The notes: generated by a model from the sequence alone, not told the origin. A stretch of 64,000 nucleotides of DNA from Aplysia californica (GCF_000002075.1 NW_004797337.1:843894-907893); one strand, 5' to 3'; shown: positions 36,201-62,602, counted from the stretch's first letter. Numbers and translations: made by a program.

Positions 36201-39200
36201 AGACCTTATAAACAAAGAGGTTTATTAATTCGTCGTGTGGGATCAAAAGGATTCAATCTATTAATAACATACTAGAATCTACACGGGAATCGTCGTTTCG
36301 TTCTAATGTGACTATTCTGCTCCCGTAAAATGCTCAGGGAAAAGGGTTTCTATTTTGCTTTTGGGTTTAGAATTTATAAACTTTGACGTCCAATGTCTCA
36401 AAAGTGCTAAAAATGCAGCATATAGTCTTTATAACCTCCTGCTGCGTTGTTTCTATAACTCACAAGTGCCCCTCCTAGAAGTTATGCGTGCTGATATAAT
36501 AAACGTTATTGTGATTAGAAAATTCGTTCCTCAAAAACAAACAAAGCTCAGTATCAATTTATTTTGCTGTTGTTAAATATCTGTCATTAAGTATACAAGA
36601 AATGCAAGACAGACAGACTGAAACATTAGAAAGTGAAATACGAAAGAGGACTTACTAATGATGCCTTTTAACCACCCGCATAAATCTTCGTGAAAAACAA
36701 AACACACTAAGAATTATTTTTTTGTTTAATATTCGAGGTTTTGTCTCTGTTCACAGCGGAGTATTGGGGGATGAGGTAGGATGGGGAGAAGGGGGGGGGG
36801 GGGTGGGGGATGAGAGGAGGTGAAGAAAGATTTAGTAAGGTTAGTGGCAAGCCAGGTGGATGTAATGTAAATCTGTTTTGACATTCTATCTCAGTTGCAG
36901 TAGTGAAACAATCGTTTTTGACCGCACCTCACGTCACTTGTCTATCCCCAGCCTCGCCCTGGAAAAGGAGTTTGACCTGAACACCCTCAAGTTTTCCCGG
37001 AACTTCGAGGCTTCCACACTCCTCAACAAACTGAACACAGGATTCACGGCCGAGAGCAACCTCGTCTGGTCCAGCGTCTCCCAGATGCCCAGATCTGTCA
37101 CCGGAAATCTGACCATTGACCTGTTTGGTCAAGCCATCAACTTGATGGACTTTGGAGCTCGTCTTGAAGGGTTGGAGTACCTCATGAAGAATCTGTTCGG
37201 ACCCTATATGCCAGAAGAGAAGAAATTCAAGGTATTACTTGAGCATGATCAAAGTGTGGTTGGTTTAATATATTTGAAGCAAAAATGTTTTGACAGTTTT
37301 GGTTTTCAAGACATCATAATATAAAGCAACATGTGATTGTTACAAATCTGCAAGTGTAACGAGAAACAAAGCAAGCAGATATGCAACCTCAAGGTCTTGC
37401 CTTTTGACATGTAGCTTCTTATTGAAAACACAATGATTCATTACTTCCACTGTTTAGAAAACAGCATTTGCTGCATGTTTACTAAATGATCCATTATTTC
37501 ATTGTCTAGAGAATAGTATTTGCAACAAGTGTCCATGCACTTTTTAACGCAGCAATAACAACAATAACAACAACAAAAACAACAACAACAACAACAACAT
37601 TCAGCCAATCAAGAACTCTTCTCTCACAATCAACAACAATTCTCGATGTTCTCAGAGCCCCACGAAAGCAGAAGATGTCGAAGGCTCCGTCTACGGTCGA
37701 GTCTTTGGTAACGAGATGTTCTTCATGCACAGCAAGACAATGACTTCCCCCTTCAAGAAACTCCCCACAACCTGGCTGGACCTTCTTATCCAGCTGTCCA
37801 AGAAACAAGACTACACCCTGACCCAGTCAGCTCAGTTTATGGACGTCAGGTAAAGGGAACACATTTCAAACTGTTTTTGTCGTTAGCGTGACCTACGGGA
37901 ACTTTTTGTTGTTATTACAATGTTGGTTTGGGGGGGGGGGGGGGATACTACAAAAGAGTAGCGCTTTAAAGTCACAGGTAAAACCATAAGAAGGTGATCT
38001 ATCTTATACTTTGGCAGACAAGCCCTCCAGTTTAGATAAGGGAAAGGCGCTGCTATTCCTGATGTTTGTGATCATTACAAGCTGCTTGCTGTTATTTTCC
38101 TATACTTTATTCTTATAGTTGCAATAGTATTGTCCCCAGAGCTTGAGGCATTTTAAAGATTGTAGCACGTTTAGGACAAAGACTTGAATAATTACTTTTT
38201 TTCAATTGGGCAAGAAAAGCTAGTACGTTTTCGTGAACATCCAACTACTTCCTTTTCACCATCGCCTGAGATGTAGCAATTAGACGCTTTGCCATCGCAC
38301 GCAGAAGGCCCAAATTCAGTTCCCGTGTAGAGGGAGTTTTACCGAGTATATCAGTCTTTCTGATTGGACAATGTACCCTTCTCAGGCCACGTTGGCCATA
38401 TCAAGCAGCGTCAAAGCCCGCCTCTCAAATGATCTGAACTGTATCGATCGGGGTGTAAAAACACCTACATTTTAACAAAAACCCTCCACCCTGGTGTCCC
38501 CAGCATGATCATCCCCACAACGGCCGGTCTGCCCATCCACATCGACGTCAACGGAACCGGCACTCTGGACCTGGTCCTCAGTGGAAAGATGGACCTCCGC
38601 AAACTGGGCTCTTCTCCCCGCTCCCTGGACATTGATGGAGAAATCCGACCAAGGTTAGTCGCCTCACTTTATCAAGTCAACAAGTTACTCTTTCTGATGA
38701 ATTGTTGTAAAAACTGAGAATCTTCTGATATGTTGGAGTCTTCACAAATACTTTAGAGACGGGGTATTTAAGGGCGGGGGGACAGTATAATTGCAATTAC
38801 AATTTGTGACTGGAGAATTGAAGCTGAAGTGAAATCAAGCACAACCCTTTTGTTGTATATCTCAAAACACAAGAGTTCAGTGCATAATTTTAGGGCTTGT
38901 AGATGTCTGTTGAACAGCTATGCAGATTTTGAAAGCAACTGCCACTCATTGTTTAATAAAAGAATCAAATGATGTTATCTATTGCGTTCCCCAGATAGCA
39001 TTCCTCTGTGCCGTAGAACTCATCAAAGTGGTAACATCAGGAAGTGACATATGTGGTTTTCTGGGGCACTTGATATAATAAGAGCTTTGAACGTCTTGCT
39101 CTTATGAAAATATAAAAGGCATATGGAGCAGGGGCAGACCCAGACAAAACTATTTTTGGAAAATCTGAATAAATGGTTGAGGAGGAAACACCAGGATAAT

Positions 39201-44800: not shown

Positions 44801-47800
44801 GGCAGAGTACATGAAATGTAATGATCTCCAAGCGGGATGGATTGAGAAGGAAAAAAAGATTTGATTGTTTAGGTTTGACGCCCCTGTTAACAATGTACCC
44901 TTTATCCCTTTGGAGGTGGAACCTCAAAACTTATGGTCCTTTTCCGATAGGACTGAATCAAATGGGTGGTTAGCCTTAAAACACCCAAAACAACACAAGC
45001 TCAAAACGCCTTTTTGGTGGATCTAAACGGAGGCCTTCCGCTCCTTAGCCTCATGTGATTCCAACTAGGCTAACGGTGAGCCCACGGTTTCAATAATGAT
45101 ATGTGAGGCAGCATGGTAAAATCAGGCGCTCGTCAAAATAATGAAAGTGAGGAAACTGGCATTTTCCCGTAAGTTTGAAAATCTGTATAGATTTTTTTAC
45201 ATTTTTGGCTCAACACCCTTCGTGTCCATTAAAAAACACATAGCTGTTTGAATTCTACGAAAAGACTTTGATTTAAGGCACAAAAATATACATTTTTAGT
45301 TTCCGCGGACTCTCAAGCTTAAGGGGGGGGGGGAGGGTTATAAACCCATCTCGGTAACTATGGAATTTTCAGATAAAGCCTTATAGCAAGGCGGTATAAA
45401 AGGGAAAACATATGCAAAATGTAACTTTAATGTTTTTGTTTAAGTGTACGGTTTCCATGATAAGGGCGCCATATTGAAAATAAACAGCTGTCAAAAAAGT
45501 AAAAAATATTTTTTATTTACCATTTGTTCATATTTGGTACATTGACAGATATACTCAATACAAAATTTCATACAGTTGGGATCTTGAATATCTTGAACAG
45601 GAAAAAAGTTAGAGATGGATAACTGACCTCATGCCTCTGAATTCGATTACATATTCAATTATTTAATGCTTAAAATGGTGTGTAATTTTTCAAGCTGAAA
45701 ATATTCTTGACATTTCTTGTTGTCTGGAAACTGTTCAAATATTTTAGACAGCAACAATTTCGATATTGTAGTATTAATGTGCTTGTGGTCATCTTCATAG
45801 ACGTACAATGCCTAGTTATGTTGAGTAACCCGATTGTAAGAATTTAACGATTTGCCCCCCCCCCCCCCCCCACCCACTGTTTCCCTCTTTCTACATACAG
45901 GGCGTGGACGTAAGTGTGATGGGCCAGCATGAGCACAACCCCAAGATGCTTGACTCTAACGTCATGCTCAATTATGGAGGAAAAGGAAAAGACCTGAGCG
46001 CCCAACTGGCCGTTAAAGACAAGAGCAGCAAACTGGCAAAGATCAACGGCAAAGCAGTTGTTGCCTGGCCCGGCTCAGCCTATACCCTGACCACCGACTT
46101 TGACCAGAAGTCTGAGAAAAAGTATGTCCACGAGATGAACCTGAAAGACAACAGTGGCATGAAGCACGCAGTCACCACCATCTACAAAACTCCCAAGGGA
46201 AACGCACACGAGTTGACAACGAAGTTCATGCTGGAAGGCGTGAAACCAATCACCGTAATTGGATCCACCAACCTTGACCTGAAGAATTTTGAAGTCTCAG
46301 GAGAAATCCAGAAAGGCACAGATACTTACGGTCTTAAAACCAAGTCAAAAGTTTCTAAGGCTTCAAGCGCAAATGTTGTTGTGGAACTGGTGTACCCTGC
46401 CAGGCGCATGACCCTGCTCGTGGATGGAGGCAAACAGAAGAACAAGTTCAACGGCCGTGTTGAGGCTGCTTGGGACGCAGACAAGGACAAGAGTCAGACG
46501 ATTGTGATTGATGGGTCCGGATACATGAAGGCATCCAAGAAATCCACGAGTCTGGGAGGCGACATCAAGTTCAACTCACCTTTCGAGAACTACGAAGACA
46601 TCATGACAGCTTTCAAATACGGAAGTGACGACAGTCAGCATGATCTCAGTGGCAAGTTGTCGTGGGGTGGAAAGGGCAAACAGGTTGTGTCTAGCCTTAC
46701 TGTCAAGAATCCCATTTCTCTGAGTAATCTGAAGATGGTGGCAGAAGCAAAGAGCCCTTTCAAGGGATTCAGAGTTGTTTCCGTTGATGTTGACCATTCC
46801 ATGGAACCCACACTGAAAACTGTTCTCAAGGGCAGATGGGAAAAGGAAAATGGAAAACTGACAATCGAAGGCGAAAACCTCGGAGATCTGTACAGACGTA
46901 ACATCAAAGGAAGTGTTGCACTCAAGTCCACTGTGAAAAATGCCGAGGACATCAAGTTGAGCTTGTCTCACTCTGATGGATCAGGCCGAGTTTCTTCCAA
47001 CGCTGCACTCATCCATAACGGAAAGCCTTACGGATACGACATGAACATGATCCACTCGCAGAACGGCTGGCAGGTCAAGAACTCTGGAGATCTCGTTTTG
47101 ACAATGCCCAACACCAATGTCAAGTCAAGCTGGAATCACAAGAACGGTGACAAATACATCAAGTCGACTCTGACTTCCGACTGGGGAAAGAACCGTCTGC
47201 TCGTAGATTTGGATGGTTCCCAAGACCTTCTGTCTTCTGGTGCCCTGAGCGGTGATGTCAAGATCCAGACTCCGTGGAGATCGTTCAGAAGTGTAGATCT
47301 CTCTTTGAGCCACAAGCAAGGGCAGGGTCTCATTTTGAACAAAGCCTCCCTTAAACAAAACGGCCAAGTGCAAGCCTCTTCTACCCTGAACTACAACGGC
47401 CACCCGTCCGGACTGGACATTGAATTTGCTCTGACGTCCCCATACCATGAAGACATCAATGGCAAGGTAAACAGCAAACACAGCGCCTATCCAATGACCG
47501 GTATGGCTGAAATCAGCTGGTCCCCCAGGTCTAAAGCTGTTATGGAAGGTTCCGTGAACGTTGCATCATGGGAAAGCGCAAATGTTGACTTGAAGTTGAT
47601 TACTCCTCTGAGAGAGTACCGCAACATTGTCTTCAAAGCCTCCAACAAAGGCGAAAGGGGAGAAATGGTATCTCACATGAACCTCGACTACGGAGTCCGA
47701 AAGAACATCGACTTGGAAAGCAGAATGGTCTACGGTGAGGCCAAGAAAATGCTCCGGCTAAGAATGACAACTCCTTTTGAGCAAATGAAATCCTTGGACA

Positions 47801-50800: not shown

Positions 50801-53800
50801 CAGAAGGCAGAGTCACTTACATGGACAACAAAGATGTCTCTGGTAAACTGAGATACAAACGGAATGGTGCTCGTATTGTTGCCGAACTCAAGACGCCCGT
50901 CACTGGTTACGAGCTGACCAGATTCGAGTACAAAGAGAACAACAACCAGCGAAAGGCTTTCTCTGAGGGCTCTCTCTTGTATGGAGACAACCAGGTACTC
51001 CAAAGTACTGTCAAGATTGTCTATCCTCCAAACCCAGAAATGATGGTCACTCTCAAGACGCCGATCAGAAACTATGAGGACATATCTGTGTCCTACTCGT
51101 TGGACACAAAAGGACCTCAGTACAAACTGGAGAGCAATGCCAACATGGGTAACGGTCGTAGCGTCACTTTGAACGGTGGTTGTGACTCTTCTGACGACAT
51201 CTCGGCTTACGCAACCCTGAACACACCAGTCTCTGGCTACAGGAACCTCGGGGTGGATTTCCACCACTCTGGAAACGACCAGAAGTTTACAACCCAGGGA
51301 AAGATCACTTACGCTGACAACAAAGACATCAGTGGAAAGGTTAATTTCTACCGGTACATGTGGCGTCGTGTGACTGCTTCGGCGGAACTGAGTGCTCCTT
51401 TCTCTGGCCTGGAAAACACCAAAGGTGAGGTGAACTTTGAGGACAGATCCACCAGTATGAGCGCGTCGTCATCTTTGCAATACGGAAGTGACCAGAAGCT
51501 TGACGGCAGTGTCAAACTGACCTACTCTCCAAACTACGACTTGCTCGTGACGATCAACACTCCTTTTGATGATCTCAGGAACGTTCGCGCCGTGGCTACC
51601 GCCGACCTCAATGCCCCAAGCTACATGGTGACCAGCGGCCTCGTATACGGCTACAACAAAGCCTACTCTGCCAACGGAAAACTGAACCTGTTCTCTGCCC
51701 AAAGGCTTGACGCTTCCCTGGAGGTACAGACGCCTATTACAGGTCTCGAGAGGACCAAAGTCGAGTATAACCACAATGTCGACTCCTCCAGCATTCAAGG
51801 CTCCACCTCTTTGGCCTATGAGAACGGACGCAAGACGATCAGTGCTGAGCTTCAGTCCAGCATCTACCCATCTCTGGACGCCAGCGTCACAGTGAAAACT
51901 CCCGTCTATGGGTACAGCAGCGTGCAGGGGGCACTGACCTACGACAGCTCTTACAACAAGTACGAGGCTTCCAGCTCTCTCAAGGTCGAAGGTCGCAGCC
52001 TGTACACCATGAACTCCGGTCTTGATTACTCCGTGGAACCCATTAGAGTCTTTGCCAAGATCTCCACCCCACACACCGACTTCCGCAACGTGGAACTTGT
52101 CTTGACGCACGAGGGTCAGTTCGACAACTTCAAGTGTACCGGATTCCTGGCCTCTCCACTCACGGACAACGTCAACGCCCAGGCGTCCCTGGACTACAAG
52201 AGTCCATACGACATGAGCCTGAGCACATCCGTGAAGAGCTCGCTGGCCGGCATGGACGACCTCAAGTTTGAGCTAAAGAATTCTGACATCGCCGGGGAGA
52301 AGAAGATGAGCGCTGTTGCTGGATGGACCGACGGTCAACAGGTAAATTGTTTCTTCGTATTCAAGCTTCTCAACTCTGTTTTTTTTTGGTGACTTACTCT
52401 TATCCTTTTTGAGACAAAATAGATCACATTTTGTTGATATGGAATAACGGTTTTATATAACAGTAACAAACGAATTTCAGCTAGGGGATTGAGTAACCAA
52501 ACAGATGAAAAATTATTCTACTTCCTCCCGCCTACTTGGAGGTGTTTTATTAGCGTTGAGGACATTGTCGTGTTCTGACTACTTTTGCAATAGAACTTAT
52601 ATAGAATTCANNNNNNNNNNNNNNNNNNNNNNNNNNNNNNNNNNNNNNNNNNNNNNNNNNNNNNNNNNNNNNNNNNNNNNNNNNNNNNNNNNNNNNNNNN
52701 NNNNNNNNNNNNNNNNNNNNNNNNNNNNNNNNNNNNNNNNNNNNNNNNNNNNNNNNNNNNNNNNNNNNNNNNNNNNNNNNNNNNNNNNNNNNNNNNNNNN
52801 NNNNNNNNNNNNNNNNNNNNNNNNNNNNNNNNNNNNNNNNNNNNTCACACAAGCTCTACAACTCTCCACGCAAATGCTCTACAATATGCTCCATCCGCTT
52901 GCAACTATTGTAGCCCCAGAAGAACCTAGAGCACCCAGAGACTTTCGAATGACAAACTAAGTTCAAAACTCCCAACAGGCTCTACCGCTCCCTTCCCCAG
53001 TTGACGCCAGAACACTGGGAAATGTTCTGATGACAAGCTATTCTACCGTTTCCTTCCCCAGGTCCAGACAGACGTCATGTACCGCTCACAGGAGACCTGG
53101 TACGAGGACAAGACTCATGCTGACGTCAGCCTGTCCACTCCGTTCGCCGCCCTGCGCAGCCTGGCTGTACAGACCGAGCAGACGAGAAAGAGTCAAGGCC
53201 GTGAAGGAAAATTGGCAATCGACATGAACGGTGCCCAGCTCCTGGACGTGAGTGGGGAGTACAGCTCCAAGGACAAACACGAGGCTTCCTTGACCTTCAA
53301 CCGGCCATGGCCCATGCAGTACTCAGCAAGCGGCTTCAACACCGAAGGTCACATGGAAGCTGATGTGATGGCCAATTGGAACAGGTAATTCTTGTTTGTT
53401 TGCCTTTTCAGAAGCGTGGTTTAACATCTGGTCTATTTCTATATTGTTTTAGTAAAACAGTTGGGTAATCCTGAACTTTAAGTCAGGAAAGCGTATATAC
53501 AGAAGTCAGAAGTACTCAGGAATAGGCATCATTTTACAAAACACTTGGCAATTAGGCGCCGCTAGCAGAAGATGTGCGTTTAAATCCCCTAAAGGAGACA
53601 ATTTCAATTGAGTATCTCTTCTTTCTGCTGGGACGTTTTACCCCTTCAGCCCAGGTTCACTCTGACAGGCAGGGTCAAAGCCTACCTCCTAAATGGTCTA
53701 CATTATGCTGTTGAGGGCGTAGTAAAAAAAAACTTACTTTTTAAAAAGGTTTTTTTTTTACCCGTTAATTTTTAAAAATTCTATTCACTCACCTGTTTGA

Positions 53801-54446
53801 TGTGTCTGTTCATTCACTTCCCCACAGAGATGACTTGACCAGCAACGTGCACCTGGTGGCTGTGGTCAACGACAAGTCTGACGATTACGTCACCGACAGG
53901 GCTGTGGATATGAGTGTTGAGAGGTCATCTCGCAAAATGGGCGTGTCTCACACCCAGAAGGTGTCCGGCTCCCAGCTGACCAGTACCGGCAAGATGTTCT
54001 GGGACTCTGGCGATGAGGACAAGGTCTCCTACGACCTGACCGTCACCGACAACAGCCGGCGCAACAAAGACGTGACTGAGGGCAGCCTCAAGCTGGGCCT
54101 TCCTTTCAAGACTCTCGAACTCTCTGNNNNNNNNNNNNNNNNNNNNNNNNNNNNNNNNNNNNNNNNNNNNNNNNNNNNNNNNNNNNNNNNNNNNNNNNNN
54201 NNNNNNNNNNNNNNNNNNNNNNNNNNNNNNNNNNNNNNNNNNNNNNNNNNNNNNNNNNNNNNNNNNNNNNNNNNNNNNNNNNNNNNNNNNNNNNNNNNNN
54301 NNNNNNNNNNNNNNNNNNNNNNNNNNNNNNNNNNNNNNNNNNNNNNNNNNNNNNNNNNNNNNNNNNNNNNNNNNNNNNNNNNNNNNNNNNNNNNNTCACA
54401 CAAACGCACCCACACACGCACCCCCCCCCCCCACACACATACATTC

Positions 54447-54479
<33 letters not shown>

Positions 54480-57400
54480 ATATTCTCTCATCTGCCCCCT
54501 CTCTCCTTTTTTTCTCTCTCAAGTCACTTGCTTACGTCTATAGCCTGGGAACAAACTTTGTGTAAGCAGGTGTGCTGGAAAAAAGGAGGTTGGGGGGGGG
54601 GGGTGACACAGTATCGACCTTTCGGGCCAGATGCTGAGAAAGTAGTTAAACACCCATAAACAGAAACTGGGAAAACCCTCACACCGAGAAAGAAAAACTT
54701 TGCATTCGAAGAATCTACTATAGCAACAGAAATTACAGTATCCCTTATACTGATCAATATAACGTTATATTTATCTTTCTCACTTTCAGCGACAGCCCAG
54801 CTGCCAAAACAGCCGACGCCACCTTCAGCTGGGACGCAGAGCGAGACAGCAGCAAACAGGTCGGTGTCAAAGCCACCATGAGGAGAGGGAAATCTCTGCG
54901 TGGTGACATCACTCTCAACATGCCCTCCATCAGAAAGGTGAGCTTTGATCTCTCATACAGTTGTGATTTGGAACATACTTAACACTGACTTTGATAGGTT
55001 TCTTACCATAAGGAAGAGGTGTTGTCCTCCGTTGTTCCCAAATACGTAAAAAGTAAAGCTGTTCCCGCATCCACTCCGGACATTGGGGATTGCCTTGATA
55101 GTGAGACAACTTCCTGGGCCTTCGGCGTTAGGGTGGCAGGTTCCTTTCCACGCCGACTTTACTTCCCCAACTCGAAGTCAGGTACCCATTACTGCTGGGT
55201 GGACTGGAGGGGGAGGGGTGGATTAAAAAAAACACCTGTCCGAACTGAGACTCGAACCCGGACTTTCCGCTTCGGAGACGAGCGCACTAACTGCTCCGCC
55301 ACACTAGCCCCACCTCAAATATATAAACAAAAATAATGAGCAGTACTTATTCCTTTTGATAGTTTTTCACCTTTGACTACCTCATGGTATGGTTGACCGT
55401 TTGGGCACCATTGAAGATTTCGCAACCATTTCCGTGCACATTTCTCCGTTCTCAGCCTTACATAGTAAGATGTTCCAGTCATGGCTAGGTCACTCTTTGA
55501 TGTTGTCTATCCCTCACTTCCTCTCTTTTCTTCTTCGTCTCCCTCCTTGTTAGTTTGCATCTTTTCGCTGAAGTCAGGACGTCTTCATAAAGCTCTAAAG
55601 CATATCATTATTAATGTCATATTAGTGTCTTGGAGCCTTATATCTGTATTTTTAAACCTAGTCCTAAATCCCTCCCACAGGAGATCCGCGTGGACGGTGA
55701 GCTCATGCTCAACAACGGCCGCATCATCCTGGACTCCAAGACCGACATCTCTTACTCCAGCGACGCCAGCAAGACCTTGACCCTGACCTCCAAGGTACAG
55801 GATATCTCTGACTACTACAGCAACTACAACTACAGCGTCGAGCTGGGCCTGAGCCACCCGTATACCAACATTGACCTCAAGATGACCTCTCACCTGGGAA
55901 GTTCTGACGAGCGCATGACCGTTGGCGTGGAGACGAGCTACCTGACCGCCCGCAGACAGACCAAGAACCTGGCGCTACTGGCTGAGATCAACAAACTCAA
56001 GAGACAGATCAGTGTGCAGGTCAGATTCACAAACGTATTTGAACAAGATTTTGAAAATTGCACGATAACTTTTCCCTTTCGTTAATTGAAATTTGTTCCG
56101 AACAGTTGACGTGGTTTAATTGTCTTTGTCATTTTCGCACATATTGCATCTAGTTCAGCTGTACTCGGCAGAGACATGTTTATGGGAACTAACAATCAAA
56201 ATTATAGAGTTAATTGACCATTTCAAAATGAAAGTTGTACACTTGGATACATAATTCGCATCTGGCTAATTAGGAAAAAATAACGTCAAGATAAATAAAA
56301 TGCATTTATCAACGTTGGTCAAGTTGCCCATTTTAATACCATTATTATACTTCTGGAATATTTATATAGGTTCACACCTATGTGAATGAAACTCGTGCAT
56401 TATATTAACGTTACAAACACAATACTAGATTCTTTTATTCCCCACGGAAAGGAGTTTTGCTATATTCAATTACAAGTTTTGCTATATTGAGTTTTTACAT
56501 AACCTGTTTCACCCACAGATGTCCAACCCCATGAACAAGATCGAGATCATGGGTGACGTTGTGAGCACCAGCCCGTCCAAGCTGAGACTTTTGAACAGGA
56601 TTGACGACGCCGAGGTGTTCCGCTCCGAGCTCACAGTAGACAGTGACAAGAAGTCTGCCGAGATCAGCATAGTCATGGACTCTGGTAGGTTGAGGACAAC
56701 ACACTCGATTCTTTGTTTTGTACGGCAATTATTGTCAACGGAATGTTTTGTTTACGAACGTTCGTGATGGAATCGTGTTCTATCAGGGTATTGGGAACAA
56801 GGGCGAACATTTCCGAAATCCAGTAAACGTATCCTGATAACTTCACAGCAATTGTTCCCCAGATGTAAGTATGCATTTACTCTACCCTCAACACAATCTA
56901 GGTTGTTTTACAGGTAGGAACTTTTGAATCAATACTTTTCTTGTGAAGGACCGACCTGGATGGGGTAGGAAAGGGGGGGGGGGGGGAGAAAGGGGGGGGG
57001 GGGGGGGCAAAAACGTTCCAGTACAACGAATGAAATTTGGAAAGTTTCCCTCAGATATTGACTTCCATTATATGCACCAAAAGAGAGACATGGCAATGAA
57101 TTTTGGACTCAGTGAGTGTTTAAGGATGTGTCTTATCATTTTACACCCATGTTTGTGTATGTGTACGCGCGCGCTGTGTGAAAGAACTGTGCCTCACTAC
57201 TTCTCGTTTCCCTCTCACAGAAAAGTTCAGCCTTCACGCCCAATACCCAAACAGCAGCGCTTTCCGCGCCTACGCCAGTCACTGGACACCCGAGGTGAGC
57301 CACCAGGAGGCGCTGCTGGCCCTTCGCCTCAACACGACACGTCTCCTGCACTCCCACCTGCACTGGAGGCCCGCCTTGTGGGCGGAGCTTACTGCCGGAG

Positions 57401-60400
57401 TCGAGGAGAGAGCCGCACGTGCCGGGGTCAAGTCCGCTGAGATGTGGGAGCTGGTCAATGAGGCTGTGGCTGACGAGGTAAGGCCTGCTCATCTTTGTTT
57501 ATATTTAAGTGGGTGTTTTAAGCCCCCATCGAAAGTATTTAGACCGTTTAAATATCCCAGCAGAATGACCGAGATGCTCGATTAAGACCCTAATCACATG
57601 GACGTAAAGCAAACACACGGTTTATATTTTCTACGAAAATACATGCCTCCGCTAAAGACCAAGTCAAAGTATCGATAACACAAAATATAAGACATAAACT
57701 GACAGCTGAAATTGTCTGACCATCCACCTTTTCCGTTTTCAGATCTCTGGCAAGTACAGAGCAGTGTCTAGCTCACTGGACGAAGAACTGACGCCGCTCA
57801 TCGACGCCCTAGAGGGACAGTTTAACAACATGGCCTACAAGATGGCGGACATGTCACGTGAGCTGAGAGCCATGTACCAGCGTAACGACTTCCACGTCCA
57901 GGGCATGGGCGACACCTACATGACCTTGCAGTAAGTCTCACACAATCTTCTCACCCCGTTTAAAGAGGTTAAGTGAAACACATGCTGAACTGCATACTAC
58001 ATATACCTGAAGGCTGTATTGCTTATTAGTGGATCACATTTTTACTAAATTTCAGGCCTATAACAATTGTTAAGCTCCTCGTCGACGCACTATGAGACTG
58101 AAATATGCTCTGACTTTTCATTCAGTGCGCCTTCCAACTGTTGTTTCAAAAGTGTGTCGATAGTGCCGCATAACACTCCCTCCCTCCTTCCCTCCCCCTC
58201 CCTCCCTCCCTTNNNNNNNNNNNNNNNNNNNNNNNNNNNNNNNNNNNNNNNNNNNNNNNNNNNNNNNNNNNNNNNNNNNNNNNNNNNNNNNNNNNNNNNN
58301 NNNNNNNNNNNNNNNNNNNNNNNNNNNNNNNNNNNNNNNNNNNNNNNNNNNNNNNNNNNNNNNNNNNNNNNNNNNNNNNNNNNNNNNNNNNNNNNNNNNN
58401 NNNNNNNNNNNNNNNNNNNNNNNNNNNNNNNNNNNNNNNNNNNNNNNNNNNNNNNNNNNNNNNNNNNNNNNNNNNNNNNNNNNNNNNNNNNNNNNNNNNN
58501 NNNNNNNNNNNNNNNNNNNNNNNNNNNNNNNNNNNNNNNNNNNNNNNNNNNNNNNNNNNNNNNNNNNNNNNNNNNNNNNNNNNNNNNNNNNNNNNNNNNN
58601 NNNNNNNNNNNNNNNNNNNNNNNNNNNNNNNNNNNNNNNNNNNNNNNNNNNNNNNNNNNNNNNNNNNNNNNNNNNNNNNNNNNNNNNNNNNNNNNNNNNN
58701 NNNNNNNNNNNNNNNNNNNNNNNNNNNNNNNNNNNNNNNNNNNNNNNNNNNNNNNNNNNNNNNNNNNNNNNNNNNNNNNNNNNNNNNNNNNNNNNNNNNN
58801 NNNNNNNNNNNNNNNNNNNNNNNNNNNNNNNNNNNNNNNNNNNNNNNNNNNNNNNNNNNNNNNNNNNNNNNNNNNNNNNNNNNNNNNNNNNNNNNNNNNN
58901 NNNNNNNNNNNNNNNNNNNNNNNNNNNNNNNNNNNNNNNNNNNNNNNNNNNNNNNNNNNNNNNNNNNNNNNNNNNNNNNNNNNNNNNNNNNNNNNNNNNN
59001 NNNNNNNNNNNNNNNNNNNNGTTGATGAACATCTGGGGGCTCTCAATATGACCTAGAGGTTAAAGTGTTGGCCTCTCATTCAAAGGTCCCGGGTTCGAAT
59101 CCGGGTAGCGATCGAAAAATTTTCTTCTCTAAAAGTGTCTCCTTTCACCTCCTCTAGCAATGTTTTGTCGTCTGCTTTCGTCTCCTCTTTCTGCCCCCAC
59201 CCTTCACCTCTTTTGCCCCCTCCTCTGGGCTCCTGACTCTTTCTGCAGCCTTTCTACTGCTACTCCTTGGCTCCTTCTTACTTGTCTTTCAGCCACACCC
59301 CTGATTTCTGATAGGAAAGATCTACACCTAGCCTTCTCGGACAAGGGCTTAAAAATCTCGGTGGGCCCATGTGCAAGTTGCGCACGTTAAAGATCCCTTG
59401 GTGGGCTAAAATCGATACGAGTAGACTTCGGCGCCACCCGCGAAAAATTCAAAATTTCCTACCAACTGAAAATGTTTAATATGTCCCGCGCTCATATGAC
59501 TTTATGCAGTTGCGAGCGCCGTAAAACACTTACCAAAAAAAAAGAACATCTTAAACGTCTGCGTTCCTGAACAAGGCTTAAATCTTAATTTTACGCCATC
59601 TGAAAACAATTCAGACTGTTTAAACACTTAACTCACTTAATTTTCTGCGCTGCCAGAATTTTTACTTCTCACCGTGGACAGAATAGGTTTACGTTGATAC
59701 AATAAAATATCAAAAAAGGGGCCTTGTGAATTCAATCAATTATGTTTTTGTGTAACCAAAGTGACATAAGATGTTCTTTATGTCCACACCCAAGCATTGT
59801 TTGAAAAACATCCTTCCTTAAAACCAAATCTCGTCCCCCTCTCCCTTTCACAGACACAGTGCACAACACCAGCTACGTAGACTACATCGCAAACAGATTT
59901 GTAGAGGTCAAGAATGTGGACATTTCACCCTACATCACTTCCATTGAACTGCCAGAAGAATACAGCAACGCCATCTACAGCGCTAGAGACTCCGCAGTGT
60001 CCGGTATGAAGGACTTGTGGGAGCGACCAGAGATCGACATTGTCAGGGGAAATCTTAACAAAGTCTACCAGCAGGTGAGATTTAAGAACAATATCCGTGT
60101 CTTTTACATTTCTATTTTGTTAATATTACGTTGAACTTTAGTGGTTCTGTTACTTTCGGTTTCAAAACTTGAAGAAGAGCATAAGTGTCGATGTTGTATC
60201 TCAGGCCAGAGTTTTGCAAAGACCTGGTTGAATTGCCGATAAGATAGTGCACATACTTTTTTTTATACATTCTCACTCTCAGGAGTGACTTTGACTTTGC
60301 TGGAGAAGATAAAGAGCCCCCACACTAGAAGAGACCAAGTCATAATTACTTTTCTATTTTGCTTTCCACCCAAAATAATCGACTTTCATTTCATTTTTTC

Positions 60401-62602
60401 CTCTGGTCAGTTCTCATCCATTATCATTAATTCTACCATTCTTTCGTCTTTAGTGCAAGTTCTTAAACCTCACTTGTTTTAAATTTGTGTACCCTTTTGC
60501 AGCTAAGCTTACTGATTTCTTTTCTACTTTTACATTAGAACAAGTATCACTTCTCACTCCCCNNNNNNNNNNNNNNNNNNNNNNNNNNNNNNNNNNNNNN
60601 NNNNNNNNNNNNNNNNNNNNNNNNNNNNNNNNNNNNNNNNNNNNNNNNNNNNNNNNNNNNNNNNNNNNNNNNNNNNNNNNNNNNNNNNNNNNNNNNNNNN
60701 NNNNNNNNNNNNNNNNNNNNNNNNNNNNNNNNNNNNNNNNNNNNNNNNNNNNNNNNNNNNNNNNNNNNNNNNNNNNNNNNNNNNNNNNNNNNNNNNNNNN
60801 NNNNNNNNNNNNNNNNNNNNNNNNNNNNNNNNNNNNNNNNNNNNNNNNNNNNNNNNNNNNNNNNNNNNNNNNNNNNNNNNNNNNNNNNNNNNNNNNNNNN
60901 NNNNNNNNNNNNNNNNNNNNNNNNNNNNNNNNNNNNNNNNNNNNNNNNNNNNNNNNNNNNNNNNNNNNNNNNNNNNNNNNNNNNNNNNNNNNNNNNNNNN
61001 NNNNNNNNNNNNNNNNNNNNNNNNNNNNNNNNNNNNNNNNNNNNNNNNNNNNNNNNNNNNNNNNNNNNNNNNNNNNNNNNNNNNNNNNNNNNNNNNNNNN
61101 NNNNNNNNNNNNNNNNNNNNNNNNNNNNNNNNNNNNNNNNNNNNNNNNNNNNNNNNNNNNNNNNNNNNNNNNNNNNNNNNNNNNNNNNNNNNNNNNNNNN
61201 NNNNNNNNNGTGTGTGTGTGTGTGTGTGTGTGTGCCTTTGCGTGTATTTTTATTAGTTTATTACTTTACAACGATCATTTGCCAACAAATACCATCTTTC
61301 TCTCTCACTCCCTACCAGGGTTCTTGGGCTTACAAGTACTGGAACGTAGAGGAAAACCTGAAGAAAAACCTGGGACGTGCCATGACCTTGTTGAGGGAGA
61401 TCGTGGAAGAGGAACTCAAAGAGATGACAACTGAGGTCAAAGCCCTGTACCAGAACCCCATCACTGTGTGGATGCCAGAGCAAGGAGAGATCCAGGCACA
61501 GCTGGCCCTGCCCTTTGACCTCCAGAGACTGGACCAGGTCCCTGACGTGAGCCCCCTGGTCAACAAGGTGGAGGAGATTGGCCAAGAGGTCGTGACCTAC
61601 TTGCCTGACCACAGCACCTGGGAGGACATCAAGCAGGTGAGGAGAATTCCTGGTTTTCTTGTTATGATCCTTTTTGCCAGTTGTGAATAACCATCGTTGT
61701 GTTATTGTACTTCCATTCTTTATAACTCCAACATTTGACAAGTTTATAAATGTTTCTTAAAAAATCGAGCATCACGAGTATCAAGAGTCCTAACCGCGTA
61801 TCATTTCAACTGTCTATAATCCTACTCCCCCCAAAACTTAAAAAGAGTGACCGGTACGGTATTGAAAAATGTCCATGATTCCAGTAACAAACACTTGGAA
61901 CACTCGATATTTTTATTTAGCTTCAAACTTCCTAATTGTTTTAAACTAAATCCTAACAACACACGTTTGCAACGGTTAACAATTTATGGTTAAACTACTT
62001 TGTTGTGTTGAACAAGACTCCAGCAAGAAACACTTGGGGCGCTCAACAATTTTTCATGTAATGTTAAACTATTCCACTGTATTGAACAAGTTTCTGGCAT
62101 CAAACACCTGGAACAATCAACAATACATCTGAAACTGCTCAAAGGATCACCTGCCCAAGACAATCACCTGTACTAATAAAAGCTTCCTACTCCCTCCCCC
62201 CCACCCTTGCGTTTCTTCTACATTATATTGACACCATCTAAGACATTCACCTCTTTGAGACAACCTCTCTTCTCCTCCTTGACAATGGGCGGCCGACTTG
62301 GACAAAGTCGTTTTTTAATTAGCACTAGACTAATTCATTGTCTTGAAAAAAAAATAAGGCTCTTGTACTCGTGCATGAATGACCCAAACCTATACGTTCT
62401 GTCCGTCTAGACCCAAACAAATCAAAGTTGCTGAAACTAATGACCTGTGTTGTCTCCCCTGTCTCAGACCGTGTCTGGCCTGTGGCCGGTCCAGGAGGAG
62501 GGACAAGTGGAGCCGCTGGGGAAGTACCAAACCTCCAGGCAGTACCGTCAGCTCAAGAGGGGAGGCAGAAAGGTCAACAAGATGAGAAAATACGGGCAGT
62601 AA
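18224..62602 (+). CDS. Large lipid transfer protein (apolipophorin / apoB / dLp-like precursor); multi-exon gene, >=30 exons, ~4,200+ aa
   Basis: Exons with GT-AG boundaries and compatible phases splice into one frame. LLT-module motifs: NFKKGILSSFQN, TDVAGECRTEY, FLDALP, LRAIGNAG, DSELRVAAYLALMRCP, QVGSFVYSHL, KFSRNFE, YGRVFGNE, PTTAGLP, NTPGSKVDR. N-terminal signal peptide. Summed visible exon length ~12.6 kb (includes ~490 N). The 3' end is uncertain. Confidence 0.93.
19657..20099. mobile_element. MITE with ~38-bp TIRs (ATATGTGAGGCAGTGTGGTGGAATCAGGCTCTCGTCAA)
   Basis: Near-perfect inverted termini; further family members at ~17483-17973, ~45099-45320 and ~62750-62935. Confidence 0.85.
20623..24149 (+). 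pseudogene. Sola-type DDD transposase pseudogene, interrupted by a nested insertion
   Basis: Frameshifted or stopped fragments at 20623-21010 and 22860-24149. Confidence 0.78.
21011..22859. mobile_element. Nested non-autonomous TIR element inside the Sola transposase
   Basis: CTGTCCCCAGAG...CTCTGAGGATAG imperfect TIRs; GTTTGT duplicated at 21005-21010 and 22860-22865; subterminal GCAACTTTT repeats. Confidence 0.75.
24890..25375. repeat. (CCT/CTT)n polypyrimidine low-complexity tract
   Basis: Direct reading; contains an N-gap. Confidence 0.9.
27172..27252. repeat. (AAC)n microsatellite
   Basis: Direct reading. Confidence 0.95.
27995..28223 (+). mobile_element. Second copy of the Sola right end
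   Basis: Almost identical to 25508-25735; follows a 100-N gap. Confidence 0.85.
28350..29440 (+). mobile_element. piggyBac (PGBD-type) transposase remnant
   Basis: YIP..P..YGIKIF, PYLGK, GSGRNITSDYF, LTMVGTVRRNK, KG.VDAMDH, KTNRWPL and a degenerate C-terminal Cys cluster; multiple frameshifts and deletions. Confidence 0.85.
30123..30306 (+). CDS. LLTP exon (N-sheet; LRFSFQNG...NFKKGILSSFQN)
   Basis: Polypyrimidine tract plus AG, donor GAG|GTAATG, LLT motif. Confidence 0.88.
31045..31197 (+). CDS. LLTP exon (TDVAGECRTEY)
   Basis: CAG| acceptor, |GTGAGT donor, phase 0-0, conserved E-D-V-x-G-x-C motif. Confidence 0.92.
31852..32050 (+). CDS. LLTP exon (EIQSLPIMK...CTETHVYRPF)
   Basis: CAG| and |GTAAAG, phase 0-1. 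Confidence 0.9.
32457..32653. mobile_element. Palindromic MITE, same family as 2567-2703
   Basis: TACGGGGTGCC...GGCACCCAGTA termini, shared GCGATCGCCCAACTCG core. Confidence 0.7.
32816..33068 (+). CDS. LLTP exon (start of alpha-helical domain)
   Basis: CAG| and |GTAAGT, phase 1-2. Confidence 0.9.
33819..33984 (+). CDS. LLTP exon (KFFLDALP)
   Basis: CAG| and |GTATGA, phase 2-0. Confidence 0.9.
34251..34495 (+). repeat. Intronic minisatellite, ~43-bp unit x ~6
   Basis: TATAGACAAC..AACTCACAGACATGAGTGTAT.AT.TCACTG repeated up to the splice acceptor. Confidence 0.85.
34510..34689 (+). CDS. LLTP exon (SSMVNNYC)
   Basis: CAG| and |GTTAGA, phase 0-0. Confidence 0.88.
35242..35391 (+). CDS. LLTP exon (LRAIGNAG...IRVTAAEAFRRMPC)
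   Basis: CAG| and |GTGAGG, hallmark LLT motif. Confidence 0.92.
35914..36143 (+). CDS. LLTP exon (DSELRVAAYLALMRCP; QVGSFVYSHL)
   Basis: CAG| and |GTGAGT, hallmark LLT motif. Confidence 0.92.
36952..37231 (+). CDS. LLTP exon (KFSRNFE...LFGP)
   Basis: CAG| and |GTATTA, phase 2-0. Confidence 0.9.
37656..37849 (+). CDS. LLTP exon (SVYGRVFGNEM)
   Basis: CAG| and |GTAAAG, phase 0-2. Read by hand; not in the ORF track on +. Confidence 0.88.
38504..38653 (+). CDS. LLTP exon (PTTAGLP)
   Basis: CAG| and |GTTAGT, phase 2-2. Confidence 0.9.
39318..39500 (+). CDS. LLTP exon (SAAVEISGSM)
   Basis: TAG| and |GTATTT, phase 2-2. Confidence 0.88.
40039..40300 (+). CDS. LLTP exon (GMELCG...PYFPLTGP)
   Basis: CAG| and |GTAGGC, phase 2-0. 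Confidence 0.9.
40655..40990 (+). mobile_element. tRNA-derived CORE-type SINE
   Basis: A box TAGCCTAGTGG, B box GGTTCGAATCC, followed by TGTGTCCTTGGGAAAGGCAC...CCCAGGTGGGAATGGGTACC core. Confidence 0.8.
41183..41330 (+). CDS. LLTP exon (NTPGSKVDR...RTPWKK)
   Basis: CAG| and |GTAAGA, phase 0-1. Confidence 0.88.
41943..42203 (+). CDS. LLTP exon
   Basis: CAG| and |GTGAGT, phase 1-1, coding-type composition. Confidence 0.87.
42800..43072 (+). CDS. LLTP exon
   Basis: CAG| and |GTGAGT, phase 1-1. Confidence 0.87.
43648..43885 (+). CDS. LLTP exon
   Basis: TAG| and |GTCAGT, phase 1-2. Confidence 0.86.
44466..44685 (+). CDS. LLTP exon
   Basis: CAG| and |GTGAGT, phase 2-0. Confidence 0.87.
45901..52341 (+). 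CDS. LLTP giant exon (~6.4 kb, ~2,147 codons including N-gap 49339-49825); repeated amphipathic beta-strand 'TP' units
   Basis: CAG|GGC acceptor and CAG|GTAAAT donor; stop-free on both sides of the gap (3.4 kb + 2.5 kb). Confidence 0.9.
53062..53384 (+). CDS. LLTP exon
   Basis: CAG| and |GTAATT, phase 0-2. Confidence 0.88.
53828..54126 (+). CDS. LLTP exon (3' end runs into N-gap)
   Basis: CAG| acceptor, phase 2; open until the gap. Confidence 0.85.
54790..54937 (+). CDS. LLTP exon (FSWDAERD)
   Basis: CAG| and |GTGAGC; the WDA motif echoes AAWDADKD in the giant exon. Confidence 0.85.
55048..55311 (-). mobile_element. tRNA-derived SINE
   Basis: Minus strand: TGGCGGAGCAGTTAG, GGTTCGAGTCT, CAGTCCACCCAGCAGTAATGGGTACCTG, tail CTTTACTTTT. 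Confidence 0.75.
55681..56019 (+). CDS. LLTP exon
   Basis: CAG| and |GTCAGA, phase 0-0. Confidence 0.88.
56519..56684 (+). CDS. LLTP exon
   Basis: CAG| and |GTAGGT, phase 0-1. Confidence 0.86.
57221..57477 (+). CDS. LLTP exon (LLHSHLHWRP)
   Basis: CAG| and |GTAAGG, phase 1-0. Confidence 0.87.
57743..57930 (+). CDS. LLTP exon (amphipathic helical region; MYQRNDF)
   Basis: CAG| and |GTAAGT, phase 0-2; read by hand. Confidence 0.86.
59040..59545 (+). mobile_element. tRNA-derived SINE with Nin/Deu-like central motif
   Basis: B box GGTTCGAATCC (~59092), GCACGTTAAAGATCCC motif, 3' tail GCTCATATGA...GCGAGCGCCGTAAAAC shared with other repeats. Confidence 0.7.
59854..60074 (+). CDS. LLTP exon
   Basis: CAG| and |GTGAGA, phase 1-0; requires a hidden upstream exon. 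Confidence 0.83.
61319..61636 (+). CDS. LLTP exon (YKYWNVEENL...PEQGEIQA)
   Basis: CAG| and |GTGAGG, phase 0-0. Confidence 0.88.
62468..62602 (+). CDS. Last visible LLTP exon (TVSGLWP...RQLKRGGRKVNKMRKYGQ*)
   Basis: CAG| acceptor, phase 0; ends in TAA 62600-62602, or at a weak donor CA|GTAAAA. Confidence 0.7.
   Translation, partial: TVSGLWPVQEEGQVEPLGKYQTSRQYRQLKRGGRKVNKMRKYGQ

What the first reader, a model, noticed from the sequence alone, without database searches (positions are those of the whole stretch)
45901..52341. apoB-like giant exon encoding a ~2,100-aa array of ~50-aa 'TP' beta repeats in an invertebrate lipid-transfer protein
Seen: all other exons are 50-340 nt, but this one is ~6.4 kb. 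Its translation is alternating hydrophobic/polar beta strands punctuated about every 50-55 aa by an [ST]P-[FIVW]-x-[GD]-[YFL] turn (NSPFENY, KSPFKGF, QTPWRSF, ITPLREY, TTPFEQM, ETPFPEY, KTPFEGY, STPFDDF, QTPIRGY, KTPVTGY, NTPVSGY, NTPFDDL, KTPVYGY...). Known: vertebrate APOB also carries much of its amphipathic beta region in one giant exon, and crustacean dLp/HDL-BGBP precursors have long beta-rich inserts. Insect apolipophorins and typical vitellogenins are considerably shorter. Inference: this is an extendable lipid-wrapping beta belt or groove whose repeat number could set particle size or lipid load, i.e. a little-characterised giant lipoprotein system in this lineage.
Basis: partly seen in the sequence, partly recalled or inferred. 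Interest (0 to 1): 0.8.

Follow-up and report, generated by a model that had tools for sequence, protein, structure and literature searches.

The report
Sea-hare apoB-like lipoprotein belt exon
This 6.4-kb exon is real, is transcribed unspliced, and encodes the roughly 150-strand lipid-facing beta "belt" of a mollusc relative of human apolipoprotein B; the protein family is known, but the belt's regular 55-residue build has not been described.

Summary
A single phase-0/0 exon runs from AG|45901 to 52341|GT on the + strand. It has 3,438 and 2,514 read bases on either side of a 488-N gap. Both sides are open and in the same frame at the nominal gap length, and relatives carry 149-150 open codons there. 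Spliced contigs from two studies join the upstream exon (…44685) to 45901. They tile 45901-49338 without any internal joint.

The gene is an apoB/apolipophorin-type large lipid transfer protein. Upstream exons carry Vitellogenin_N, Vit_open_b-sht and DUF1081. The genome is probably Aplysia californica, and the protein is estimated at about 4,300-4,400 aa.

The exon holds at least 26 clear copies of a ~55-aa unit with an [ST]P turn (about 35-39 units in all). A 3-unit super-repeat is visible in the 3' half. AlphaFold2 predicts 141 amphipathic strands of ~10 aa with no loop longer than 8 aa. The best Foldseek matches for both halves are the human apoB100 structures. No sequence-level match to apoB100 was found.

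New details:
- The exon borders are conserved in distant relatives.
- The genome holds about eight paralogous genes.
- N-glycosylation sequons are depleted about 12-fold.

The sibling note s1-770212, on this same DNA, is confirmed. Verdict: a new member of a known kind, of moderate interest.

The parts
30130..36141 (+). Upstream small exons encoding the Vitellogenin_N (lipoprotein N-terminal) part of the LLT module. The first ~115 codons lie further upstream and were not located.
   Evidence: PF01347 matches on C67 translate to window 30151-30312, 31906-33036, 35227-35385 and 35923-36084. Exon 35923-36084 scores 50.1 bits. tblastn of the full-length Haliotis model P0041 maps its residues 116-619 here.
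36941..39501 (+). Exons encoding the Vit_open_b-sht (DUF1943) domain.
   Evidence: PF09172 scores 63.4 bits on 36941-37201 and 47.5 bits on 39316-39501. The own-genome search hits the same places.
40037..40300 (+). Exon encoding the start of DUF1081, the domain typical of apoB and apolipophorins.
   Evidence: PF06448 scores 28.5 bits against a cut-off of 25, E 2.1e-6.
41180..44685 (+). Five linker exons between DUF1081 and the giant exon (about 41180-41332, 41939-42208, 42784-43068, 43638-43883 and 44464-44685).
   Evidence: tblastn of P0006, P0001 and P0041. Spliced joints 43883|44464 and 44685|45901, GT..AG, appear in contigs of runs X1 and X13.
45901..49338 (+). Giant exon, left read part: 1,146 codons, predicted as 81 beta strands, with 13 clear ~55-aa units.
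   Evidence: Open frame. Unit HMM. AF2 pLDDT 73.2, all beta. Foldseek top hits are apoB100 9ea7, 9e9r and 9bdt at E 3e-10 to 6e-8. Transcript contigs tile it with no internal joint.
49339..49826 (.). Assembly gap (488 N) inside the giant exon. It was not filled.
   Evidence: The frame is kept at nominal length. Relatives have 149-150 open codons here. A transcript contig runs 201 nt into it.
49827..52341 (+). Giant exon, right read part: 838 codons from 49828, predicted as 60 beta strands, with 13 consecutive units and a 3-unit (~165-aa) super-repeat.
   Evidence: Open frame. Unit HMM. Unit identity at lag 3 is 31% against 16-20% at lags 1, 2, 4 and 5. AF2 pLDDT 79.8. Foldseek top four hits are all apoB100.
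53062..61636 (+). Downstream small exons of the C-terminal part (about 53062-53385, 53823-54119, 54782-54937, 55669-56022, 56516-56752, 57217-57477, 57740-57931, 59853-60074 and 61316-61636). Some exons are probably hidden in N gaps at 58213-59020 and 60563-61209.
   Evidence: tblastn of P0001, P0006 and P0041. No Pfam family, and no VWD, on these exons. Gaps are listed.

Best explanation
The exon encodes the lipid-contacting beta belt of a secreted apoB/apolipophorin-type lipoprotein scaffold of a sea hare, probably Aplysia californica.

The small upstream exons encode the N-terminal lipid-transfer module, which starts a lipid pocket in the ER. The giant exon then supplies about 150 antiparallel strands of ~10 residues. 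These are arranged as ~55-residue four-strand units, each closed by an [ST]P turn. One face of the sheet is apolar and would lie on the neutral-lipid core. The other face is polar and would face the hemolymph. The sheet would therefore wrap the particle as the apoB100 belt wraps LDL, but without apoB100's large inserts.

Shown here: the exon structure, its splicing and transcription, the repeat, the amphipathic pattern, the LLT domains, the predicted all-beta meander and its fold match to apoB100, and the sequon depletion.

Inferred: lipid binding, particle assembly with MTP, secretion, and any link between belt length and particle size.
For: - Family: window exons carry Vitellogenin_N, Vit_open_b-sht and DUF1081. 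Homologs are named apolipophorin or apolipophorins-like. The full-length Haliotis model P0041 (4,323 aa) has the same three domains, and its residue 1360 aligns with the start of the giant exon.
- Transcript: joints 43883|44464 and 44685|45901, with unbroken tiling of 45901-49338, in contigs of two studies.
- Amphipathic pattern: the 180-degree hydrophobic moment has z = 7.8 and 10.5 against shuffles, with no helical signal. On predicted strands the mean hydropathy is +1.3/+1.6 on one face and -1.7/-1.8 on the other, z about 13, with a longest loop of 8 aa.
- Fold: AF2 gives pLDDT 79.8 and 73.2 with 60 + 81 strands. For the right half, Foldseek ranks 1-4 are all apoB100 (E 1e-7 to 2e-5, prob 1.00), and the next hits have prob 0.6 or less. 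For the left half, ranks 1-3 and 5 are apoB100 (E 3e-10 to 9e-7). The apoB100 belt has 120 strands, mean 11 residues (PMC11839476).
- ER passage: there are only 2 N-x-S/T sequons in 1,984 residues, against 24.5 +- 4.4 expected (minimum 11 in 2,000 shuffles). The same depletion is seen in seven homologs.
- Related published protein: the published peptide list for Biomphalaria BgApo1 includes one with a TTPFDGY motif resembling this repeat. BgApo1 is expressed mainly in the digestive gland (PMC10799875).
Against: - No sequence or profile similarity to the apoB100 belt was found.
- Foldseek TM-scores are low (0.17-0.30) and pTM is 0.33-0.38, so only the local sheet architecture is predicted, not the global shape.
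- In the VIA-align second look, outer-membrane barrels (LptD, ushers) score Z 12-15 against 11.0 for apoB100. The apoB100 row has by far the longest aligned stretch, 658 residues.
- Teneurin YD shells follow apoB100 closely for the left half, with prob 0.9-0.98.
- No lipid, particle or protein data exist for this gene.
- Two polyA RNA runs show no reads on the exon.
- The first exon and signal peptide were not located in the window.
Confidence: 0.8

Rival explanations
1. The beta array folds on itself into a closed shell, spiral or giant barrel, like a teneurin/Rhs YD shell or an outer-membrane-type barrel. It would enclose a cavity rather than lie as an open belt on a lipid particle.
For: Teneurin YD shells are the next Foldseek hits for the left half, prob 0.90-0.98. 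In VIA-align, LptD, usher and TonB-type barrels score Z 10-15. The pTM is low, so the global shape is open.
Against: These hits have TMq of only 0.06-0.11, against 0.17-0.30 for apoB100. No RHS/YD or any other Pfam family lies on the exon. The exon sits directly after an LLT module with DUF1081. The authors of the apoB100 structure report that AF2 models of the belt collapse when lipid is absent (PMC11839476).
Confidence: 0.08
2. The fold is the same, but the main role of this paralog is not bulk lipid transport. It could be yolk storage, clotting or pattern recognition, as with crustacean apolipocrustacein and dLp/HDL-BGBP, or glia-specific lipid handling.
For: About eight paralogs exist in this genome, which leaves room for division of labour. 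LLTPs of the same branch serve as yolk or glucan-binding proteins in crustaceans (PMC1783640, PMC8416765). 'Apolipophorin' marks glia in Berghia (10.1101/2023.06.22.546160). Expression differs between libraries.
Against: Nothing in the sequence points to a non-lipid role. BgApo1 is judged unlikely to be a primary yolk protein (PMC10799875). These roles in other animals still rest on lipid binding.
Confidence: 0.1
3. This is an assembly artefact: two separate exons, or pieces of two paralogs, joined across the N gap, perhaps with an intron in the gap.
For: The gap length is only estimated. A 96%-identical copy exists on another contig (C983), so mis-joins are conceivable.
Against: Both flanks are open in one frame and collinear with single open frames of 2,143-2,212 aa in four paralogs and in four other loci. 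A transcript contig that is over 99% identical continues 201 nt into the gap without a joint.
Confidence: 0.02

Closest known systems
Human apolipoprotein B-100 beta-belt (PDB 9e9r, 9ea7, 9bde, 9bdt; PMC11839476)
   Same: Both have an N-terminal LLT module followed by a very long antiparallel amphipathic sheet of ~10-11-residue strands. It is the best Foldseek match for both halves. Most of each belt is encoded by one giant, constitutively spliced exon: 6,441 nt here and 7,572 nt for APOB exon 26 (PMC3640928).
   Different: There is no detectable sequence similarity in the belt. The belt here has no interstrand inserts, with a longest predicted loop of 8 aa, whereas apoB100 has nine inserts of 30-700 aa. 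It has a regular 55-aa, four-strand period with an [ST]P turn. About 141 strands are read, plus about 11 in the gap, against 120 in apoB100. Whether the exon borders are homologous was not tested.
Biomphalaria glabrata BgApo1 and other mollusc 'apolipophorins' (PMC10799875; Plakobranchus P0006, Haliotis P0041)
   Same: They are the same family. They share LPD_N, DUF1943 and DUF1081, internal repeats and no VWD. P0006 is 39% identical over the left part of the exon. The unit HMM finds 19-25 copies in P0006 and P0041.
   Different: The published work lists domains and expression only. The belt fold, the 55-aa unit, the giant exon and the paralog expansion are not described there. The protein here is estimated at about 4,300-4,400 aa, against 3,607 aa for BgApo1.
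Insect apolipophorin II/I precursor
   Same: It is in the same LLTP branch, has DUF1081 and is a circulating lipid carrier with a predicted amphipathic beta cluster (established knowledge; Smolenaars et al. 2007, as cited in PMC10799875).
   Different: From my own knowledge, the insect protein is about 3,300-3,400 aa, is cleaved by furin inside the LLT module and ends with a VWD domain. No R-x-K/R-R site was found in the mapped LLT exon parts. No VWD was found in the window exons or in P0001, P0006 and P0041.
Crustacean apolipocrustacein and dLp/HDL-BGBP precursors (PMC1783640, PMC8416765)
   Same: They are large invertebrate LLTPs of the apoB/apoLp branch with long regions after the LLT module.
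   Different: They were not compared by sequence or fold here. Their known roles (yolk, glucan binding) are not shown for this gene.

Membership tests
[quoted passage not shown] | N-terminal LLT module: Vitellogenin_N (LPD_N) plus the open beta-sheet domain (DUF1943) | tested here: met
   PF01347 and PF09172 score above cut-off on window exons.
[quoted passage not shown] | DUF1081 after the LLT module | tested here: met
   PF06448 scores 28.5 bits (cut-off 25) on exon 40037-40300. It is also present in paralogs and in P0006, P0041 and P0036.
[quoted passage not shown] | Long amphipathic beta region downstream of the LLT module | tested here: met
   The beta moment has z 7.8 and 10.5. There are 141 predicted strands with a two-faced hydropathy pattern, z about 13.
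[quoted passage not shown] | Signal peptide and secretion through the ER | tested here: inconclusive
   The first exon was not located in the window. The Haliotis homolog P0041 starts with a hydrophobic signal-like segment. Strong N-x-S/T depletion fits ER passage.
[quoted passage not shown] | Forms a lipid-carrying particle | not testable with these tools
   This needs lipoprotein purification and proteomics.
Vertebrate apoB-100 | Beta-belt fold | tested here: met
   This rests on predicted models only. apoB100 entries are the top Foldseek hits for both halves, with prob 1.00. VIA-align gives Z 11.0 over 658 aligned residues.
Vertebrate apoB-100 | Sequence homology of the belt region | tested here: not met
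   Neither the exon halves, nor their family profiles, nor the repeat-unit profile hit apoB100 chains in the PDB at E up to 1-10.
Vertebrate apoB-100 | Nine interstrand inserts, including long amphipathic-helix arms | tested here: not met
   There is no helix of 4 or more residues and no loop over 8 aa in 1,984 modelled residues. Weak ApoA1/A4/E-like signals lie only in the C-terminal exons of the homologs P0006 and P0036.
Insect apolipophorin II/I | C-terminal VWD domain | tested here: not met
   No PF00094 on ten downstream window exon stretches or in P0001, P0006 and P0041. VWD is present in more distant relatives (L001, L007, P0036).
Insect apolipophorin II/I | Furin cleavage site (R-x-K/R-R) inside the LLT module | tested here: inconclusive
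   None is present in the mapped parts of the LLT exons. One RYKR lies inside a belt strand. Exon edges and unmapped exons were not covered.
Repeating beta-groove (RBG) bridge proteins (VPS13/ATG2 type) | Five-strand-plus-loop RBG units forming an open groove, in cytosolic proteins | tested here: not met
   No VPS13 or ATG2 structure appears among the top 50 Foldseek hits of either half. The unit here has four strands and the context is a secreted-type LLTP.
Rhs/YD-repeat shells (teneurins, Tc toxin BC components) | YD/RHS repeat sequence signature and a closed shell | tested here: not met
   No Pfam RHS/YD hit on the exon. The fold hits have TMq of only 0.07-0.11.

The most novel reading that the evidence does not exclude
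The ~55-residue, four-strand [ST]P unit is the ancestral building block of the apoB-type beta belt, and the giant exon is inherited from the common ancestor of protostome and vertebrate apoB-like genes. The exon starts at about residue 1,357-1,360 of the protein. From memory, and untested here, human APOB exon 26 starts at a very similar residue number. Belt length would set the particle circumference. It ranges from 1,443 to 3,040 aa among paralogs and taxa, changing in whole units or 3-unit blocks. The sea hare's roughly eight paralogs would then make lipoproteins of different sizes for different tissues.
Probability: 0.2. Interest if true: 0.7.

Novelty: new member of a known kind. Interest (0 to 1): 0.5.

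Why it matters
ApoB100's belt was only resolved in late 2024. It is hard to study because half of its C-terminal region is made of inserts.

The mollusc protein appears to be a "pure" belt: about 2,100 residues of regular four-strand units with no inserts. If that holds, it offers three things:
- a simple natural model for how an amphipathic sheet wraps a lipid droplet;
- evidence that the belt architecture predates the protostome-deuterostome split;
- a natural series of belt lengths (about eight paralogs in one genome, 1,443-3,040 aa across relatives) for testing whether belt length sets particle size.

The near-total absence of N-glycosylation sequons across distant homologs is a testable constraint on belt folding in the ER.

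For genome annotation, such belts carry no Pfam family. They appear in databases as 'uncharacterized' or as stand-alone giant ORFs.

Tried and rejected
- Pfam on the two exon halves gave only sub-threshold noise.
- PDB sequence searches with the halves, with the family profiles A1 and A2 and with the 25-unit repeat profile A3 found no apoB100 or other meaningful hit. P0006 hits only lipovitellin, through its LLT module.
- The VIA-align second look was dominated by outer-membrane barrels at rmsd 25-35 Å. It does not discriminate between long meander sheets.
- The ESM Atlas gave weak leads only: a mollusc VWFD cluster at 0.93 and an arthropod hypothetical protein at 0.91.
- PolyA RNA runs X19 and X20 had zero depth on the exon, so they gave no strand or level information.
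- A furin-site search found nothing in the LLT exons.
- Cluster look-up did not name the organisms of the distant homologs P0009-P0014.
- A word search of the scan's notes found nothing related on other DNA.

Steps not done:
- The joined spliced protein was not built or searched. Exons were searched one by one, by reference.
- The big representative search and complex prediction were not used, because the family was already clear.
- The 3' junction (52341|53062) rests on sequence and homology only, because the single read-laying run went to the 5' side.
- The gap-equivalent letters of paralogs were not read.


Full report
**1. Observation**

On the + strand an open frame runs from 45904 to 52392 across an N run. 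The splice acceptor is ...tacag|G at 45900|45901, behind a long C/T tract. The donor is CAACAG|gtaaat at 52341|52342. The preceding exon ends ...CAT|gtgagt at 44685, and the next exon begins after ...ccccag| at 53062. The exon is therefore 6,441 nt at nominal gap length and is phase 0 at both ends.

**2. The gap**

- The left piece, 45901-49338, is 1,146 codons without a stop.
- The right piece, 49828-52341, is 838 codons without a stop. The frame starting at 49827 is full of stops.
- The 488 N plus base 49827 make 489 nt, or 163 codons, so the two open frames coincide at the nominal length.
- Homologs are collinear across the point: Aplysia P0001 has 150 residues there and P0007 has 149. In the contig of P0007 (L005) the two flanks are 447 nt apart inside one open frame.
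- Four paralogs in the same genome have single open frames of 2,143-2,212 aa.
- An 809-nt transcript contig lies on 48731-49338 with 1-5 differences and continues 201 nt beyond 49338.

I did not read out or fill the gap, and I did not fetch the gap-equivalent letters of paralogs. Continuity is well supported. The true missing length is probably nearer 450 nt than 489 nt.

**3. Transcript evidence**

Contigs of runs X1 and X13, from different studies, carry the joints 43883|44464 and 44685|45901. Both are GT..AG, so these contigs derive from spliced RNA. Overlapping contigs tile 45901-49338 with no internal joint. Two polyA RNA-seq runs of the same species (X19, X20) have no reads on the exon. 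Expression is therefore tissue- or stage-restricted.

**4. The gene**

A word-based protein search with the left part found these homologs:
- an Aplysia californica protein (P0001, 70% identity);
- Plakobranchus 'apolipophorin' (P0006, 39%);
- a Haliotis protein (P0008);
- several unnamed giant ORFs.

tblastn of these proteins, and of the full-length Haliotis asinina model P0041 (4,323 aa), maps a + strand gene from about 30130 to 61636. Window exons carry:
- Vitellogenin_N (for example 35923-36084, 50.1 bits);
- Vit_open_b-sht (36941-37201 and 39316-39501);
- DUF1081 (40037-40300, 28.5 bits against a cut-off of 25).

In P0041 these domains lie at 45-600, 633-890 and 927-1024. Its residue 1360 aligns with the start of the giant exon, and its residue 3439 with the exon's end.

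The protein here is therefore estimated at about 4,300-4,400 aa. That is close to apoB100 and, from my own knowledge, about 1,000 aa longer than insect apoLp-II/I.

The downstream exons carry no Pfam family and no VWD. P0001, P0006 and P0041 also lack VWD. More distant relatives (L001, L007, P0036) do have a VWD exon.

The joined spliced protein was not built. Exons were searched one by one, by reference.

**5. The genome**

G000 has 927,310,431 bases in 4,332 contigs, and the window is C67:843894-907893. P0001 is recorded on a contig of 1,228,527 bases. That is the length of C190, which holds a 70%-identical paralog. The genome is thus most likely Aplysia californica.

**6. The repeat**

- The [ST]P-hydrophobic motif recurs every 54-59 residues.
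- A unit HMM built from these units finds 26 copies (13 + 13) at i-E<0.01, against 0-1 in 20 shuffles. Weaker copies lie between them.
- The same HMM finds 17-35 copies in gastropod homologs and 5-23 in distant ones. The unit is therefore a family feature.
- tblastn also shows off-diagonal self-matches at 20-27% identity.
- In the right piece, units three apart are 31% identical, against 16-20% at lags 1, 2, 4 and 5. This confirms the A-B-C super-repeat of the sibling note s1-770212. In the left piece the signal is gone.

**7. Structure**

Sequence pattern: the 180-degree hydrophobic moment exceeds shuffles by z = 7.8 (left) and 10.5 (right). The 100-degree moment does not.

AlphaFold2 predictions used family alignments:

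| Piece | Alignment | Mean pLDDT | pTM | Strands |
|---|---|---|---|---|
| Right | A1 | 79.8 | 0.38 | 60 |
| Left | A2 | 73.2 | 0.33 | 81 |

Strands average about 10 residues, at four per unit. There is no helix of four or more residues, and the longest loop is 8 residues. On the predicted strands one face averages +1.3 to +1.6 in Kyte-Doolittle units and the other -1.7 to -1.8, with z about 13 against shuffles.

Foldseek against the PDB:
- Right piece: human apoB100 entries take ranks 1-4 (E 1.3e-7 to 1.9e-5, prob 1.00). The next hit has prob 0.51.
- Left piece: apoB100 takes ranks 1-3 and 5 (E 3.1e-10 to 9.4e-7), followed by teneurin YD shells.

TM-scores are low (0.17-0.30). This is expected for a long flexible sheet, and the authors of the apoB100 structure report that AF2 models of the belt collapse without lipid (PMC11839476). 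A VIA-align second look gives Z 11.0 with 658 aligned residues for apoB100 9bde_A. It gives Z 10-15 with about 300-360 aligned residues for outer-membrane barrels, so that method does not discriminate here.

There is no sequence-level link to apoB100, even with family and repeat-unit profiles.

For comparison, the apoB100 belt has 120 strands (mean 11 residues) in 1,774 residues, interrupted by nine inserts totalling 1,779 residues (PMC11839476). The belt here has 141 strands in the 1,984 read residues, perhaps about 11 more in the gap, and no inserts. At about 0.5 nm per strand it would be roughly 70-75 nm long. This length is my inference.

**8. Conservation of the exon**

The proteins P0003, P0004, P0005, P0009, P0011 and P0012 are ORF-caller products that start at the same point as this exon. 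In their contigs the homology begins right after a ...ag| acceptor: L001-L005 exactly, and L006 and L007 within a few bases. In L002-L005 it ends at the same CAACAG|gtaa donor.

One assembly (ERZ26859052) has three such genes. L001, a 21%-identical relative of unknown taxon, has a 3,040-aa open frame from the same acceptor, with a VWD exon downstream. The giant exon is thus old within this family. Its length varies from 1,443 to 3,040 aa.

**9. Paralogs**

The own-genome search with the right piece finds giant open frames on the following contigs:

| Contig | Identity to window copy | Open frame (aa) |
|---|---|---|
| C67 (window) | 100% | 2,187 (as listed; spans the N run and runs past the splice sites) |
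| C983 | 96% | 2,143 |
| C221 | 80% | 2,212 |
| C29 (2.16 Mb) | 71% | 2,155 |
| C190 | 70% | 2,162 |
| C29 (0.75 Mb) | 74% / 53% | 1,828 |
| C438 | 32% | 1,443 |
| C492 | 26% | 1,641 |

Each has Vitellogenin_N and Vit_open_b-sht exons upstream in the right orientation. C983 may be a haplotig of the window locus. Biomphalaria is reported to have two Apo genes (PMC10799875).

**10. Sequon depletion**

The exon has 2 N-x-S/T sequons where residue shuffles give 24.5 +- 4.4, with a minimum of 11 in 2,000 shuffles. Seven homologs, including distant ones, show 2-4 sequons against 16-41 expected. In an amphipathic strand, N at position i and S/T at i+2 share a face, so the strand pattern would not by itself be expected to deplete them (my reasoning, not tested). 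I read the depletion as selection against N-glycans on a sheet that folds in the ER lumen. The exon also has only 3 cysteines.

**11. Literature**

- Mollusc Apo-type LLTPs are published. BgApo1 is 3,607 aa, has LPD_N, DUF1943 and DUF1081, shows SMART 'internal repeats', is highest in the digestive gland and yielded 80 peptides in ovotestis. One of those peptides holds a TTPFDGY motif (PMC10799875).
- 'Apolipophorin' is a glial marker in Berghia and Octopus (10.1101/2023.06.22.546160).
- APOB exon 26 is 7,572 nt and constitutively spliced (PMC3640928).
- I found no paper describing the belt fold, the 55-aa unit, the giant exon or the Aplysia expansion. That covers only the held library.

**12. 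Verdict**

This is the belt-encoding giant exon of a mollusc apoB/apolipophorin-type lipoprotein gene.

It is not an insect-type apoLp-II/I, because it has no VWD and no furin site was found. It is not a sequence homolog of the apoB100 belt. It works like apoB100 as far as prediction can tell.

Lipid binding, particle formation and any rule linking size to belt length are inferences. It is a new member of a known kind, with several undescribed details, and is of moderate interest.

Noticed in passing
window 45901-52341; also P0003, P0004, P0005, P0007, P0009, P0011, P0012: N-glycosylation sequons are about 12-fold depleted in the belt: 2 observed against 24.5 +- 4.4 expected. The depletion is conserved in distant homologs, for example 2 against 40.8 in P0009. 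Only 3 Cys occur in 1,984 residues.
   Followed up: partly
G000: C983:17540-20053, C221:10486-12999, C29:2161974-2164484, C190:1126200-1128710, C29:749376-750872, C438:401353-404514, C492:321190-321981: There are seven further loci with giant belt-type open frames (1,443-2,212 aa), each with LLT-domain exons upstream. This is an expanded apo-like LLTP family in this genome. The 96% copy on C983 may be a haplotig.
   Followed up: partly
window 44944-45327 (intron before the giant exon): A short repeated element has very high depth in RNA-derived contigs and in polyA reads. Most reads run on into unrelated sequence at 45099-45148, so this is probably a dispersed, transcribed repeat.
   Followed up: no
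L001 (ENA ERZ27290487), L007 (JGI 3300006082), L006 (Logan SRR32575150), P0036 (4,330 aa): Distant relatives (20-22% identity) from metagenome or unnamed assemblies have even longer belt ORFs (2,485-3,040 aa) from the same acceptor, plus a C-terminal VWD (and C8) exon. Their organisms are unknown. In L006 the ORF also covers regions that are separate downstream exons here.
   Followed up: partly
ENA assembly ERZ26859052: L002, L003, L004: Another gastropod-like genome has three paralogous giant exons of 2,187, 2,689 and 1,994 aa. Two lie about 90 kb apart on one contig. P0003 has about nine extra units relative to the window.
   Followed up: no
window 45856-45880: An unusually long poly-C run of about 24 C lies within the polypyrimidine tract just upstream of the giant exon's acceptor.
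   Followed up: no
window, whole: The window holds 17 N runs. Those at 58213-59020 and 60563-61209 probably hide C-terminal exons of this gene, since P0001 residues 2932-3018 have no match.
   Followed up: no
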